Shown one piece after another: positions 2,212-9,380 of a stretch of DNA of 64,000 bases. The position numbers and the translations under genes were made by a program. The DNA is from Mobula hypostoma. Taxonomy: Eukaryota. The notes beneath the pieces were generated by a model. That model saw nothing but the letters and a program-made list of their open reading frames with translations. It made no database searches and was not told the DNA's origin. The stretch's first letter is position 1. Every line of letters begins with the position of its first letter. The stretch is taken from positions 23,870,001 through 23,934,000 of the forward strand of contig NC_086116.1 in the NCBI RefSeq assembly GCF_963921235.1. Reading direction: 5' to 3'.

Positions 2212-5200
2212 GTAAGATTTGTTCATTTTTCTAGTAATTAGTTGTTTTATTAATTTTGTTATAACAATTTTAATGAAATTCTGAAAAATAATTTACTTTT
2301 CCTTATTTGAAATAAAAAGCATTTTAATACATTTATTCATAATATATCTAGAAATACTAATTTTATTACTGTGCAGTGAATGGCTTCCCATAAATCAAGG
2401 ACACATGCAAAACGTTCAGAAAAAGTGAAACAAACTGAATCTAAATCGTCAGTTTTAGCTGCTCTTTGAATTGACAAACATTGCAGCATTTTTCTATTAT
2501 GCATTTTACTTTATACATAATTAATTTCTATATAAACATACTTCAATTAGTTCTAAATTTATTTGAATACATTATCTGTAGCTGGAATGTGAAGCCATTT
2601 TGTGCTTTAAATTGATTACAGAGGTCAGAACTAAATACAAATCAACCCTCACTAGCTCTGAAGAACTAGCTCTGTCCAATACAATTTACTGGGAACAAGC
2701 AATTCAGAAGCAGTAAATATGATTTGTCCAGGTCTGCTTTCTCGCTCATCTTTAAAGGCAATCTGAAAATTATTCAGTAGGTCTCAATATGAATCAAGTC
2801 ATCAAATGATTCTGGCAGAAATTCAAAGATCACATCTTTGATGCCACGTATGAGCCACTATTTATTCTAAGCAAACTGAATTTCAATTCACACAATAAAA
2901 GCGAGGAGCTTGCTTAAACTGCCCCACGATTTAAAATAACATGTTAATTCTGAAATTATGATGAAACCTAATTCAATCTGAAAAGATTTACCATCTAGTC
3001 TGATCTCTGGTCTAATAGTAAAAAGGCATCAAGAATAGTATCATCCACACTGCTGCTTTACCAAATGCCCCTTGAGGTGCTATTTAAAAATGACAACAGT
3101 TGAAAAGCACTAAAAGTGTAGAAATCAAAATGCAATCAACATTTCTGATAAAGGGTCATCAATCTGAAATGTTAACAGTATTTCTCTTTCTATCATTTTT
3201 AATTCAAATGGTTTATTCAAACAGTTTACATAATTTTGTTGACATTGCTTACATTTCAAACACAAAAATTAATCATGCACCTTGTTATTTAACTTCCCTT
3301 TGAATTTCATTAGAGGAAAAACAAAATGTATATGGAGCACTGAAGAACAGTATAGGAAAACAATTTTACCTATTAATGCAAGAAACAAATAGCAAAGAAG
3401 GTGCTAAAATATATTGAAACTGCTCAGACTGTAAGTCAAGTATATAGCTCTTCCATGTCCTCCACTATATTAATACCACAAATCTTGTCAGATCTAGTCA
3501 TTGTTTGGTGTTTCTCTGGTGTGAATCTTACTTGCCACTTACCAGTCAATGCCCAAAATATTATCTAGGTTTTGCTGCATGCAGTTATGAATCGCTTCAT
3601 TTGCTGAGGAGTTGCAAAACAAATTGAAGATGGTATTGAACACTGTGTAGTCATCTTCAAGGACCTTTCCTTCACAAGGTCAGACGAAGCAACTGAGAAT
3701 GGTTGGCCCTAAGATACTGTTCTATTATGCCCAGGTCTGGGAAATTAATCTCTAATAACTACAACCATCTTCCTTTGTGTGAGGTATGATCCAAACACTG
3801 ACAGGATCTTGAGCCAATTGATCCAAGGAAAACCCAAACTATGTGGCACTATATACTATGCCCAACAGACGGCAGAATCATTCTCTCTTTAAACATTTAA
3901 CACCAATATTCCCTTCTACTTATCCTTTTGTGTTTTACTTTTTCCATGTTGCTTATATGATAAATACAACCACATACACTAAAATGTGGCATATTTACTT
4001 TATAAAGCATCAAAATCCCAAGGAACAGTTTACATTGAAAATGTAGCTATTTAACACTCATCATTTAACTAGCCAAATAAAGATGCAGTGTGAATTCCCT
4101 TTCTGGAGATATTACAGATGCAGTACCTAATATTACAGAATAAACGTTAGCTCTAATCAATTCCTGATTTGAAACTGTCTACTGCATTGATAGTGATGCA
4201 GGCAGTGTCTTGTTTTGCCTATTTAATAATCATGCATTTGTGAAGGGGAACTTCGTTACATATCAAATCCAGTCGAAGAAACAACCAGGATTTACTATTT
4301 GGTATTTACTTATAACAAACACATCATACTAAATCTGATACTTTTCATCAACTCCGGTTCAATCAAAAACCGGTTAAATAACTGAATAGTAAATCTGTGA
4401 AGAATCTATGTTTATTTAGAAATAATTACACAAATGCAATCCTCATGGCAAATAAAGGTCCATTCTACTAAATCTGTAAATAGATTTTCACTTTAAAAAA
4501 CAACTTTTACACTTACAGTGCAATAAATTAGTGGATTTTTGTGATCAGGAAAGTGTACATTAGCCAATACTGACAAATTTTATTGTAATCATTTCTTTTT
4601 TGTTTTAAGAACTGAAACATTGTATTCTGAATTATATGAAAATATCATAACCTATGGAGCAAACACAATTATACTACTTTGTTTAGTCATTTGGATATAC
4701 ACAGAAACAAGAACACTCATCGATCAGCACTAAAAGGGGTCACTGTAGCATTATATATGGAAACATTATTAATAGGCTGTTGTGCTGTGTACAAGGTGGG
4801 AAGCACTGCCCGCCTGCTACTGTGAGTTGTTGATCCAGAAGGTGACGAGAGACTCCAGAAGGCTCAACTCCTTGTGGACACTGCTGAAATAAAATAGTCC
4901 TAAGGCTTTGTGTAGAATGAGCCACTTAGATGATGTTTAGAGGCTGCCAGTGAGAGCTGACTTTGTGCAGACTGGAGTGAAGCAATGTGAAAGATGCAGG
5001 CTCAGGGTTTCATCCTGGCCAGCATGGACTGTGCTGATGTTTGGTAGAATTGCCCAGGCCAACAGTCTCTCTCATCACCTTACTATTGGATAACACTGAA
5101 GGCCTAGAGTTTGCTTTGTGGTAACAAGGTCAATGGTCAATAATCGCCACTGAGCTAGTTACCAAGGCAAATTTTTGCACTGAGGTAAACTGGCCAACCG

Positions 5201-6027: not shown

Positions 6028-7420
6028 TAATTTGTAGTTCTACACACCCAAGCCAGGGGAAAAAAAAACAGCTCTGCATTCTTCTAAACTCTATATTATT
6101 GGCCAAGTCTACTTACTTTCCTTTTCATACAAAATCTCAAAATCCCAGGAATCAACCTGATAAATTTTCACTGTACTCCTTTTACTGCAAATAGATCTTT
6201 CCTAAATTTGATACACCATACCCCTACACAATATGTCCATTCAAATCAATGGACCTACTGATCTCAAGCAATTGCAAGGGTTGCAACACTTGTCCTATTA
6301 CTTCTTCCCTTCCCTTCACTGAAGGACCCAAACCTGCAATTCTTCTCATTTCTCAGTTAGTGTACTGAATTTGCCGTTCATAATGTAGTCTGCTGTACAG
6401 TGGAAAGATGAAGCTGCAGGGGTGACTCAAAGCTCCCCTTTGCTTTTCACCTGAATTTTTCATCCTCCTCCATCTCTGACTGACGACTATGACCTCCTGC
6501 AAGGTCATAATAAAGCCCAATTTAAGCCTGAGGGATAGCACCTCATCTGCTATCTAGACACATTATAATCTTCAGGACTCAATGCTGTATTCTTTGATTT
6601 CAGGAAATCAGCTTTCTTTACCTATATCAAAACTGGCCATTCTCTGCTGCAGGTCATCCCACCATAACATTCACTCAATTTTTCTCTCTTCATTACCACA
6701 TTATCACAATCTGACCTTCTGGATGCATGCTAGATGCTGTATTTAATTACTTTTACATTCCTTTGTTTGTATTCTCTCTAACTGATCTTACATTGGAGCT
6801 TTTGTTCACTTTCTCTCTCTCTACCAGTTTTCATTAACCCATCAAATAGTATCAACTTGTCACTGTCACAGATCACTATTCACATTCTTGTCTCACTCGC
6901 TTTGCAATTTAAAACATTTTTCTTTCCTAATTCTGATGATCCAAACCCTTAACTGTTTCTCTTTTCGCAGACAACCTTTTCCAGCCATTTTTGTTTTAAT
7001 TACTCTTCCCGATGTAACCGAGTACTCAATCTGACTGCAAGTCGCCCAGTGCTCATGCTGAAGAAGTCTAGTATGCTCCTACTGCACCGTGGACTTCATT
7101 GAGTGCACAGCAGCTGAGTATAAGCTAGAATTCAATAGAACATTGAACTGCTACATTTGCATAGGAGTTATATAATTACAAGAAATTCTGGGCAGCAAAC
7201 ACAAAAAAAACCTTCAGCAAGACTGCTTGAAATTTTGTGATTTGGAAACAAAATCGATAAAGGCTGCATGTGTAGAGTGAAATTACAAAAAAAAGGAAAT
7301 ATTTTTGTAATCAATTTATTTGCTAGTTTAAAAAAAAAAGTAGAATTTAATATTCTTGTTTACATTTTCAGGACTGATCATCTGCAAAGAATCTGTTTCC
7401 TTTCCACTATACAAGCCGCC

Positions 7421-8578
7421 ATGCAATCGGAAATTAATCTGACAGTTAGTGATGAGATACATCATATTGATGATTACCCATCAAGTTTTCAAGCATTTCT
7501 TACTGGATTTTTGATACTGGAAATTGTGTTGGGACTCAGCAGCAATTTGACAGTACTGGGACTTTACTGTATGAAGTCAAACCTTATTAATTCAGTCAGT
7601 AATATTATCACTATGAACTTGCATATACTGGATGCTGTAATATGTGTTGGATGCATTCCCCTTACAGTAATTGTCACTCTCCTTTCATTAGAGGAAAGAG
7701 CTTTGATCTGTAATTTTCATGAAGCTTGCATTTCTTTTACTAGTGTAGCAACATCAGCAAATGTCCTTGCAATCACTTTGGATCGTTACGATATTTCTGT
7801 GAAGCCAGCAAATCGGATTTTGACAATGGGAAGAGCAATAACATTATTAACAACAGTATGGATTGCATCCTTTTCTGCATTTACGATCCCTTTCATTGAA
7901 GTCAATTTCTTTAATCTACACAATGATGAAAGCACCTGGCAAAATAAAACAATCTTATGTTTTAGTGTTAATGAATATCGCAATGACTTGGGAATATATT
8001 ACCATCTCTTAATTCAGATTCCCATCTTTTCTTTCACTGCTATTGCAATGTTGATAACCTACAGCAAAATTCTCCAAGCCTTGAACATCAAAATAGGTTC
8101 CAGATTTTCAACCAGGCAGAACAAAAGAAAAAGAAAGACAAATATTCCACTAAGTATACAACATGAAAATACTGATCAATCAGAAAATAGAAGACATAAC
8201 ATCAAACTAGGAGTAAGAACTTCAGTTTCTGTAATAATCGCTCTAAGAAGAGTTGTCAAGCAGCATCGAGAAAGGCGGGAAAGACAAAAAAGGGTTTTCC
8301 GCATGTCTCTTTTAATTATTTCAACGTTTCTCATTTGTTGGACACCACTGTCAATTTTAAATACTGTTATAATATGTAAAGGTTTAAGTGAGGGCATGGT
8401 AAAATTAAGACTCTGCTTTCTAATTCTTGCTTATGGCACAACTATATTCCATCCTTTACTATATGCATTTGCACGACAGAAATTCCAAAAAGTCCTCAGG
8501 AGTAAAATGAAGAAGAGAGTGGTCTCAGTTGTTGAGGCTGATCCATTCCCTAAAGATGCAGCAATTCACAACTCCTAG
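7421..8578 (+). CDS. GPR22: G protein-coupled receptor 22 (385 aa from the MQSE start), nested antisense in COG5 intron 6
   Basis: Class A 7TM protein with SNLTVL..YCMKSNLINSVSNIITMNLH, TLDRYDISVKPANRILTMGRA, RERRERQKRVFRMSLLIISTF, CWTP and FHPLLYAF, matching GPR22; splice acceptor TTTTCAG at 7365-7371; GCCGCCATG Kozak at 7415-7423. Confidence 0.95.
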   Translation: MQSEINLTVSDEIHHIDDYPSSFQAFLTGFLILEIVLGLSSNLTVLGLYCMKSNLINSVSNIITMNLHILDAVICVGCIPLTVIVTLLSLEERALICNFHEACISFTSVATSANVLAITLDRYDISVKPANRILTMGRAITLLTTVWIASFSAFTIPFIEVNFFNLHNDESTWQNKTILCFSVNEYRNDLGIYYHLLIQIPIFSFTAIAMLITYSKILQALNIKIGSRFSTRQNKRKRKTNIPLSIQHENTDQSENRRHNIKLGVRTSVSVIIALRRVVKQHRERRERQKRVFRMSLLIISTFLICWTPLSILNTVIICKGLSEGMVKLRLCFLILAYGTTIFHPLLYAFARQKFQKVLRSKMKKRVVSVVEADPFPKDAAIHNS

Positions 8579-9027
8579 CTAGACCACAAGAAAAACAATA
8601 AAAATACCCTCCTTCAGATATTAAAAATAACAAGTATGAACCAACAACTTTTGATCAGAATATGAAAACAAGCTGTTTTAGTTGGAAAGATCTGTAAAAT
8701 GGTTAATAGTATATATATCTCGACCCATAATTAAAATACCAAGGTTATTTGAAAATCAAATAATATTCCTGACTTGTAAATATCACTTAATTATAATTGT
8801 GCATCATGTAACTAGTACAAATGTTGTAAAGCTGATTATTCCAGTCAACTTATTTCACCTGTCGCTTCATACCATTATGAATTAAATCATTTAGACTATA
8901 ATATTTTTCATTGTGATTCATTGTCAAATTCTATCTTGAAAAAAACATTGAGAATCTAAAGCTAGCAAGAGGAATGGTTTAAAGCAAGAAAACAAAACAA
9001 AGAACAATTCCAAAAGTAATCTTCCAG

Positions 9028-9380
9028 TCAGCACAATGGTGCAGCTAACAGAGCTGTTGCCTCAGCATCAGAGACCCAGGTGCAATCCTCATGTTAGATG
9101 TATATTCCCCTGTGATATCATAGGTTTTGTGTGGATATTCATGTTTCCTTCCACATTCCAAGGACTGCTGGTTGGTAGGTTAATTGGTCCATGTAAATTC
9201 CACCTAGTATTTAGGTAAGTGGTAGAGTCTGTGGGTACTTGATGAAAATGTGGGGAGAATAGGACATGGGATTTATGCAGGAATAGTGAAGCGGAGTAGT
9301 GAAGTGAATCACAGGAATAGTAATGGTTGGCATGAACTCAGCAGGCTAAAGAATCTATTCCCATGTTGTATCTCTCTATG
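9028..9380 (+). mobile_element. HE1/V-SINE-like tRNA-derived SINE (degenerate)
   Basis: tRNA-like head, central ..TTTCCTTCCACATTCCAAGG..GTAGGTTAATTGG..TGTAAATT core and LINE-like tail; related to 53020-53290. Confidence 0.6.

What the first reader, a model, noticed from the sequence alone, without database searches (positions are those of the whole stretch)
8560..8665. GPR22 ends with TAG at a conserved Trp codon, in a leaky TAG-CTAG context
Seen: ...CAC AAC TCC TAG CTA GAC CAC AAG AAA AAC AAT AAA reads HNS*LDHKKNNK, and the frame stays open for ~28 more codons to a TGA. Known: mammalian GPR22 reads HNSWIDPKRNKK and continues ~29 aa, so the stop replaces TGG and the next few residues still align. 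The stop is followed by CTAG, the +4 to +7 context that promotes readthrough in vertebrate genes (best documented for UGA-CUAG; weaker for UAG). UAG could also be recoded to Trp by A-to-I editing. Inference: this is either a lineage-specific C-tail truncation (losing tail phosphorylation and trafficking sites), a recoded stop giving two isoforms, or an assembly error. An AATAAA lies at 8597-8602.
Basis: partly seen in the sequence, partly recalled or inferred. Interest (0 to 1): 0.7.

Follow-up and report, generated by a model that had tools for sequence, protein, structure and literature searches.

The report
Old stop codon shortens ray GPR22
In rays the orphan receptor GPR22 ends at a genuine stop codon, shared by three ray orders, that replaced a conserved tryptophan codon. 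It removes only nine residues relative to sharks, the "leaky" letters after it are leftover coding sequence, and nothing found here shows the stop is read through or edited.

Summary
The GPR22 ORF (7421-8575) ends at TAG 8576-8578, followed by CTAG, and the frame stays open for 28 codons to TGA 8663-8665.

It is not an assembly error:
- An RNA-like contig from another sample of the same species matches 8200-8896 exactly.
- Annotated GPR22 proteins of Mobula, Hypanus, Hemitrygon and Pristis end at the same ...IHNS.
- Pristis and Narcine DNA both read TCC TAG CTA GAT.

Sharks read TCC TGG CTA GAT (Heptranchias) and stop only nine codons later (WLDLKRNKK*). So CTAG is the old Leu-Asp coding sequence, in place before TGG became TAG. 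The loss is 9 residues, not 29. The other 20 residues were cut off by an earlier stop that all elasmobranchs sampled share, and a fossil of them remains in the 3'UTR.

The sequence after TAG is not kept as coding. The would-be extensions are 8, 20 and 28 codons in Pristis, Narcine and the window. The old TAA was deleted twice independently. The window and Pristis differ there at about the synonymous rate. No RNA structure was found.

Verdict: an ordinary, old C-tail truncation of a receptor that is still under constraint (dN/dS 0.11-0.16). Low-level leak-through or editing is untested.

One curiosity: skates have TAT (Tyr) at this site, one step from TAG, so they may have reverted the stop.

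The parts
7421..8578 (+). GPR22 coding sequence (385 codons plus the TAG stop), single coding exon
   Evidence: ORF and translation. Pfam 7tm_1. 99% and 98% identical to the 385-aa GPR22 models of Mobula birostris and Hemitrygon akajei. dN/dS 0.11-0.16 against Pristis and Narcine.
8576..8578 (+). TAG stop at the position of the conserved Trp codon (TGG in sharks, TAT in skates)
   Evidence: Alignment A4. TAG is also present in Pristis and Narcine. An independent contig of run X5 matches 8200-8896 with no differences.
8579..8582 (+). CTAG after the stop; the former Leu codon and the first base of the Asp codon (CTA G)
   Evidence: Heptranchias reads TGG CTA GAT, and Pristis and Narcine read TAG CTA GAT.
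8579..8602 (+). Eight former tail codons (LDHKKNNK), now the start of the 3'UTR; homologous to shark LDLKRNKK, skate LNPKKNKK and the sawfish untranslated LDPKKNKK
   Evidence: Identity to Pristis is 16/20 (80%), lower than the 88% of the surrounding 3'UTR.
8597..8602 (+). AATAAA. It may correspond to the AATAAA that lies just 3' of the old TAA in shark, skate and sawfish. It sits at the junction of a deletion (30 nt net against skate, 26 against Pristis) that removed the old TAA; MAFFT places the junction at 8598/8599, with several bases of ambiguity.
   Evidence: Alignment A4.
8603..8665 (+). Rest of the chance-open frame up to TGA 8663-8665. NTLLQIL matches skate NCLLQIF, a fossil of the bony-vertebrate tail (..KCLAS/..KCLVPQ); the remainder is old 3'UTR.
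   Evidence: Three-frame translations, shuffle test of the fossil, chance expectation.
8579..8896 (+). 3'UTR of the expressed transcript
   Evidence: The X5 contig (depth 30.9 in a run of only 89 million letters, so not whole-genome DNA) ends exactly at 8896. No matching X5 contig covers 8897-8978. The UTR is alignable across six elasmobranchs.
8881..8886 (+). ATTAAA, the likely poly(A) signal in use; it lies 10 nt before the end of the RNA contig
   Evidence: ATTAAA is kept in 4 of 6 species at the aligned place.

Best explanation
This is a real, ancient nonsense substitution (TGG to TAG) in the distal C-terminal tail of GPR22. It was fixed before the torpediniform, rhinopristiform and myliobatiform rays split. 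TAG is the working stop codon, so the ray receptor is 385 aa and lacks the last nine residues that sharks keep (W-L-D-x-K-R-N-K-K). The sequence after it is 3'UTR. The CTAG that follows is simply the old Leu-Asp coding sequence (CTA GAT) that was already there. It is the second of two serial in-frame nonsense truncations. The first was a TAA at the Val codon after ..KRNKK; all sampled elasmobranchs share it, and it removed the 20-residue end that bony vertebrates keep. The receptor core stays under purifying selection, so this is tail shortening and not gene decay. Shown here: the stop, its sharing among species, the ancestry of the context, the lack of frame conservation downstream, and expression of the TAG-bearing transcript. 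Inferred: that termination at TAG is essentially complete and that losing the basic nonapeptide is tolerated.
For: (1) Five independent assemblies give proteins ending ...IHNS: the window species, Mobula birostris, Hemitrygon akajei, Hypanus sabinus and Pristis pectinata. (2) DNA reads TCC TAG CTA GAT in Pristis and Narcine, TCC TGG CTA GAT in Heptranchias, TCC TGG TCA GAT in Chiloscyllium and CCC TAT TTA AAT in Amblyraja. (3) A 1796-nt contig from another sample and study of the same species covers 8200-8896 with 0 differences and stops 10 nt after ATTAAA. (4) Downstream configurations differ among TAG-bearing lineages. Pristis has 8 codons then the old TAA. The window has a deletion (30 nt net against skate, 26 against Pristis) that removed the TAA, giving 28 codons. 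Narcine has a separate 22-nt deletion, giving 20 codons in the old frame, plus a 1-nt deletion upstream that ends its annotated CDS earlier at ..PKMQ*. (5) Window and Pristis are 94% identical in the last 66 nt of CDS, 80% in the post-TAG codons and 88% in the 3'UTR. The dS for the gene is 0.22, so the post-TAG codons change at about the neutral rate. (6) The whole-gene dN/dS among TAG-bearing rays is 0.11-0.16. (7) The fold of 8480-8700 is no more stable than shuffles (z = 0.02), and no inverted repeat pairs with the site. (8) The fossil of the older tail lies in the skate 3'UTR, in frame after TAA: IFNKNEFDQNCLLQ against bichir IFEENEVHQKCLAE. Between 0 and 24 of 20000 shuffles reach the observed score.
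Against: TAG-CTAG is identical in three ray orders, and Pristis keeps all 8 old codons and the old TAA unchanged, which could reflect some selection. CUAG after a stop does promote readthrough in vertebrate cells, and UAG is only about 3-fold weaker than UGA in the OPRL1 context (PMC4132726), so some leak is likely. Contigs cannot exclude minor edited or variant RNA. DNA of the other Myliobatiformes (Mobula, Hypanus, Hemitrygon) could not be fetched, so downstream conservation within that order is untested. The Narcine upstream frameshift rests on one assembly and lies beside an A-run.
Confidence: 0.8

Rival explanations
1. Programmed stop-codon readthrough. TAG-CTAG is a selected leaky stop that yields a major 385-aa receptor and a minor C-terminally extended isoform, as in the opioid receptors OPRL1 and OPRK1.
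For: CUAG 3' of the stop is the motif that confers readthrough in OPRL1, OPRK1, AQP4 and MAPK10, and UAG in place of UGA keeps about a third of the activity (PMC4132726). TAG CTA GA is unchanged in the window, Pristis and Narcine. Pristis keeps an intact 8-codon extension ending at the old TAA.
Against: The motif predates the stop (TGG CTA GAT in Heptranchias), so it was not selected for leakiness. The stop is UAG, not the UGA that is invariant in known cases. The extensions differ in length and sequence (8, 20 and 28 codons). The extension diverges at about the neutral rate and faster than the flanking UTR. In the Narcine assembly the TAG is out of the CDS frame. Near-cognate decoding of UAG gives Gln, Tyr or Lys, not Trp (PMC4150775). 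The nearby 3'UTR is conserved too, so Pristis' intact codons are not specific evidence of translation.
Confidence: 0.08
2. A-to-I RNA editing of the middle A (8577) turns UAG into UIG, read as Trp. This would restore the ancestral residue and extend the protein, as at the hepatitis delta virus amber/W site.
For: From general knowledge, UAG is a favoured triplet for ADAR enzymes and editing would recreate exactly the ancestral Trp. GPR22 is a brain and heart gene (PMC11138089 abstract), and these are tissues where editing is common.
Against: The assembled RNA-like contig reads A at 8577. No double-stranded structure is predicted around the site (z = 0.02), and no inverted repeat within 2.5 kb pairs with it. 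The downstream frame is not conserved.
Confidence: 0.03
3. Assembly or sequencing error: the true codon is TGG.
For: None was found. It is a single-base difference from the shark codon.
Against: The same protein end is annotated in four other species' assemblies, and TAG is read directly in Pristis and Narcine DNA. An independent sample of the same species gives an identical contig.
Confidence: 0.01

Closest known systems
UGA-CUAG readthrough genes of vertebrates (OPRL1, OPRK1, AQP4, MAPK10, MDH1; Loughran et al. 2014, PMC4132726)
   Same: A stop codon is followed immediately by CUAG. Two of the known cases are also class A GPCRs whose C-tail is extended. The stop plus motif is identical in several lineages.
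   Different: The stop here is UAG, not the invariant UGA. The motif is older than the stop. The extension has no coding conservation, no fixed length and no conserved second stop. No readthrough has been measured.
Lineage-specific loss of a GPCR C-terminal tail (for example the mammalian type I GnRH receptor, which lacks the cytoplasmic tail that non-mammalian receptors have; from general knowledge)
   Same: An otherwise conserved, constrained receptor loses distal tail residues in one clade and stays functional.
   Different: Only 9 residues are lost here, or 29 counting the earlier elasmobranch step. The cause is visible as point nonsense mutations, with the old codons still legible in the 3'UTR.
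Amber/W editing site of hepatitis delta virus (ADAR converts UAG to UIG, read as Trp; from general knowledge)
   Same: The codon change that editing would make, UAG to Trp, is the same.
   Different: No structured RNA substrate and no G in RNA were found here.

Membership tests
GPR22 orthologue (class A orphan GPCR) | Seven-transmembrane rhodopsin-family domain | tested here: met
   Pfam PF00001 covers residues 42-348, E 4.8e-25.
GPR22 orthologue (class A orphan GPCR) | Closest relatives across vertebrates are GPR22, with full-length alignment | tested here: met
   63-99% identity over 95-100% of the query to proteins named GPR22, from rays to mammals.
GPR22 orthologue (class A orphan GPCR) | Conserved position, nested inside COG5 on the opposite strand | tested here: inconclusive
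   This is seen at the orthologous loci of Mobula, Hemitrygon, Hypanus, Pristis, Narcine, Amblyraja, Heptranchias and the chromosome-level Chiloscyllium punctatum assembly. COG5 exons were not searched for in the window itself.
Programmed stop-codon readthrough, UGA-CUAG class | Stop codon is UGA | tested here: not met
   The stop is TAG at 8576-8578. UAG gave about 3-fold less readthrough than UGA in OPRL1.
Programmed stop-codon readthrough, UGA-CUAG class | CUAG immediately 3' of the stop | tested here: met
   CTAG at 8579-8582, also in Pristis and Narcine. It is already present as coding CTA G after TGG in Heptranchias.
Programmed stop-codon readthrough, UGA-CUAG class | Protein-coding conservation of the extension, with conserved length and second stop | tested here: not met
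   Extensions are 8, 20 and 28 codons. The old TAA was deleted independently in the window and Narcine lineages. Window and Pristis are 80% identical there against 88% in the UTR, with gene dS 0.22.
Programmed stop-codon readthrough, UGA-CUAG class | Measured readthrough (reporter, ribosome profiling or peptide) | not testable with these tools
   No ribosome profiling or proteomic data were reachable.
A-to-I recoding site | Double-stranded RNA around the edited A | tested here: not met
   MFE of 8480-8700 equals that of shuffles (z = 0.02). No inverted repeat arm overlaps the site.
A-to-I recoding site | G in RNA where the same individual's DNA has A | tested here: inconclusive
   The RNA-like contig of run X5 reads A. 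Contigs drop minor variants and no raw RNA reads were available.

The most novel reading that the evidence does not exclude
The TAG may have been fixed in the common ancestor of all living batoids and later reverted to a sense codon in skates (TAG to TAT, Tyr). That would have re-attached the eight-residue basic tail LNPKKNKK, which had sat intact in the 3'UTR, either untranslated or translated only by leak-through at TAG-CTAG. Tyr is one of the residues that near-cognate tRNAs insert at UAG. This would be a documented un-truncation of a receptor by stop-codon reversion. It is made plausible by the very slow decay seen in Pristis, where the eight codons and the old TAA are still unchanged. In all three topologies that the gene tree cannot reject, this costs 2 steps at the codon, against 3 or more for independent origins.
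Probability: 0.45. Interest if true: 0.5.

Novelty: new member of a known kind. Interest (0 to 1): 0.3.

Why it matters
The practical value is negative. A tempting recoding candidate (a GPCR, a conserved Trp codon, a CUAG context) turns out to be an ordinary old truncation, because the context is older than the stop and the downstream frame is not conserved.

It also shows that the distal GPR22 motif W-x-D-x-K-R-N-K-K, invariant from sharks to mammals, is dispensable in rays. That is a natural deletion experiment for an orphan receptor whose tail function is unknown.

The locus is a clean teaching example of serial nonsense truncation, with both discarded tails still legible in a slowly evolving 3'UTR. 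It may also hold a case of stop-codon reversion in skates.

Tried and rejected
- **Orthologue DNA not available.** The fetch returned nothing ("file too large") for Mobula birostris, Hemitrygon akajei, Hypanus sabinus, Scyliorhinus torazame and a Logan skate contig. Downstream conservation inside Myliobatiformes is therefore untested.
- **Read laying.** Runs of three related organisms (X12, X17, X19) put no contig on 8200-8940, although they share 10-34% of the stretch's words. The tool warns that a filter drops some records, so this is a hole, not an absence. Only the same-species run X5 was informative.
- **Search with the C-terminal 160 aa for partial elasmobranch proteins.** It found none.
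- **PDB sequence search.** No solved GPR22 structure was found, so nothing can be said about the tail's structure.
- **RNA structure and inverted repeats around the stop.** Nothing was found.
- **Earlier scan notes.** Nothing relevant turned up.
- **Rejected: the 28-codon open frame as evidence.** It occurs by chance at 19-23% of positions.
- **Rejected: my first reading that the window's deletion is frame-breaking.** It is 26 nt against Pristis but a net 30 nt (in frame) against the skate, the more ancestral-like sequence. The argument therefore rests on the differing extension lengths and sequences, not on a frameshift.
- **Rejected: an elasmobranch frameshift as the cause of the earlier truncation.** In skate the fossil is in frame, so that step was a nonsense change at the Val codon.

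Full report
**What is there**

The + strand carries an intron-less coding ORF, ATG 7421 to TCC 8573-8575, followed by TAG 8576-8578. It is a rhodopsin-family receptor (Pfam 7tm_1, E 4.8e-25). It matches proteins named GPR22 from rays to mammals at 63-99% identity over 95-100% of its length.

After TAG come CTAG (8579-8582), 28 open codons and TGA 8663-8665. An AATAAA lies at 8597-8602.

**Is it more than chance?**

- The open frame is not. In the window's own non-coding DNA, 19-23% of positions are followed by at least 28 stop-free codons.
- TAG followed by CTAG is rare (2 of 271 TAGs), but it has a simple historical cause, given below.

**Is the stop real?**

Yes.

- The database holds 385-aa GPR22 models ending ...AAIHNS for Mobula birostris, Hemitrygon akajei and Hypanus sabinus. 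A Pristis pectinata model is longer only at its N-terminus and has the same end.
- I fetched orthologous DNA for five species and aligned it (A4). The codons around the site are:

| Species | Codons around the Trp site |
|---|---|
| Heptranchias | TCC TGG CTA GAT CTC AAA AGA AAC AAA AAA TAA |
| Chiloscyllium | TCC TGG TCA GAT CAC AAA AGA AAC AAA AGG TAA |
| Amblyraja (skate) | CCC TAT TTA AAT CCC AAA AAG AAC AAA AAA TAA |
| Pristis | TCC TAG CTA GAT CCC AAA AAG AAC AAA AAA TAA |
| Narcine | TCC TAG CTA GAT CAC AAA AAA AAG CAA ... |
| Window | TCC TAG CTA GAC CAC AAG AAA AAC AAT AAA ... |

- A 1796-nt contig from a different sample and study of the window's species (run X5) covers 8200-8896 without a single difference. 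That run has only 89 million letters but gives this locus a depth of 31. It leaves the next 80 bases uncovered, and the contig ends 10 nt after ATTAAA 8881-8886. I therefore read it as mRNA with its 3' end at about 8896. The record itself does not state the library type.

**What the comparison shows**

1. *The leaky context is inherited.* Heptranchias has TGG CTA GAT, so CTA G was the Leu codon and the start of the Asp codon before the Trp codon mutated.
2. *The loss is small.* Sharks end nine residues after the Trp (WLDLKRNKK*). The further 20 residues of bony vertebrates (VTFEDSE..CLVPQVVTD) are absent from every elasmobranch sampled.
3. *The older tail is still legible.* In the skate, the codons after the TAA read, in frame, IFNKNEFDQNCLLQ. 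Bichir has IFEENEVHQKCLAE and gar TFEENEVRQKCLAS. Between 0 and 24 of 20000 shuffles reach the observed scores. The tail was therefore cut twice by in-frame nonsense changes, first Val to TAA and then, in rays, Trp to TAG. Part of the window's 28-codon frame (NTLLQIL) is this older fossil.
4. *Nothing downstream of TAG is held as coding.*
   - Pristis keeps 8 codons and the old TAA.
   - The window lineage lost the TAA through a deletion (30 nt net against skate, 26 nt against Pristis).
   - Narcine lost it through a separate 22-nt deletion. Its assembly also has a 1-nt deletion about 30 nt upstream of the TAG, which ends the annotated CDS at ..PKMQ* and puts the TAG out of frame.
   - The would-be extensions are 8, 20 and 28 codons with unrelated ends.
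   - Window and Pristis are 94% identical in the last 66 nt of CDS, 80% in the post-TAG codons and 88% in the 3'UTR. The gene's dS is 0.22. The post-TAG codons therefore change at about the neutral rate, and faster than the UTR around them.
5. *The gene is not decaying.* dN/dS is 0.11-0.16 among TAG-bearing rays.

**Readthrough**

Loughran et al. 2014 (PMC4132726) showed that UGA-CUAG drives efficient readthrough in OPRL1, OPRK1, AQP4 and MAPK10. They also showed that UGA-CUA alone gives about 1.5%, and that changing UGA to UAG in OPRL1 lowers readthrough about 3-fold. Some leak at this TAG is therefore plausible; I infer a basal level of roughly a percent or less.

The features that define programmed cases are absent here: an invariant UGA, a coding signature, and a fixed extension length.

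Leak-through would not restore Trp. Near-cognate decoding of UAG inserts Gln, Tyr or Lys (Blanchet et al. 2014, PMC4150775).

**Editing**

From general knowledge, UAG is a good ADAR triplet, and editing would recreate Trp. Against this, 8480-8700 folds no better than shuffles (z = 0.02). No inverted repeat pairs with the site. The RNA contig reads A. Contigs hide minor variants, so low-level editing remains untested.

**A point worth following**

Skates have TAT at the site. TAT is one step from TAG and two from TGG.

The gene tree groups the window with Pristis (100% support). It cannot order skate, Narcine and that pair (AU 0.15-0.85). In each of the three unrejected topologies, TAG in the batoid ancestor followed by TAG to TAT in skates costs 2 steps, against 3 or more otherwise. 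If so, skates re-extended the receptor onto a tail that had survived in the UTR. Pristis shows such survival is possible, since its eight codons and TAA are unchanged. This rests on parsimony at one codon and I put it near even odds.

**Limits**

- DNA of the other Myliobatiformes could not be fetched.
- Relatives' contigs did not lay on the gene.
- The Narcine frameshift rests on one assembly and lies next to an A-run.
- No raw RNA reads, ribosome profiling or proteomics were available.

**Verdict**

The interpretation as a lineage-specific truncation is supported, with the correction that only nine residues are lost at this step. A recoded stop is not supported, and assembly error is excluded.

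Noticed in passing
window 8603-8625; L004 3707-3760; L005 3740-3800: The elasmobranch GPR22 3'UTR begins with a legible fossil of the 20-residue tail end that bony vertebrates still translate. In skate it reads, in frame after TAA, IFNKNEFDQNCLLQ against gar TFEENEVRQKCLAS. So an earlier nonsense change at the Val codon shortened the tail in all elasmobranchs sampled. Whether chimaeras share it is unknown.
   Followed up: partly
window about 7470-7475: The Myliobatiformes (window species, Mobula, Hypanus, Hemitrygon) lack seven residues of the extracellular N-terminus (..DD|YPSS). Pristis, Narcine, skates and sharks have them (for example DDNAQWTLDYPSS). This is an in-frame 21-nt deletion specific to that order.
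   Followed up: partly
window 7391-7393: Sharks start GPR22 ten codons upstream (MCLYPILQVT-MQSE). The window reads ATC TGT at the aligned place (..RICFLSTIQAAMQSE), so that ATG is gone and the ray models start at the second Met. The Pristis model instead adds an upstream exon.
   Followed up: no
window 9143-9260: A very high-copy repeat. Summed contig depth reaches about 100,000 in run X12 and thousands in the small RNA-like runs of four different organisms, with many partial contigs running on into unrelated sequence. It is probably a SINE-like element shared among rays.
   Followed up: no
L003 about 3640-3655: Narcine bancroftii GPR22 has a 1-nt deletion (CCCCAAAAATG against CCCCTAAAAATAC in Pristis) that ends its annotated protein at ..PKMQ*, 13 nt before the shared TAG. 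It lies beside an A-run, so it could be real or an assembly slip.
   Followed up: partly
window 8597-8602; aligned in L002, L004, L005: An AATAAA just 3' of the old TAA is present in shark, skate and sawfish, and the window has one at 8597-8602 that may correspond to it. If used as a proximal poly(A) signal, it would give an mRNA ending before TGA 8663. The RNA contig runs on to 8896, so at least the distal site is used.
   Followed up: no
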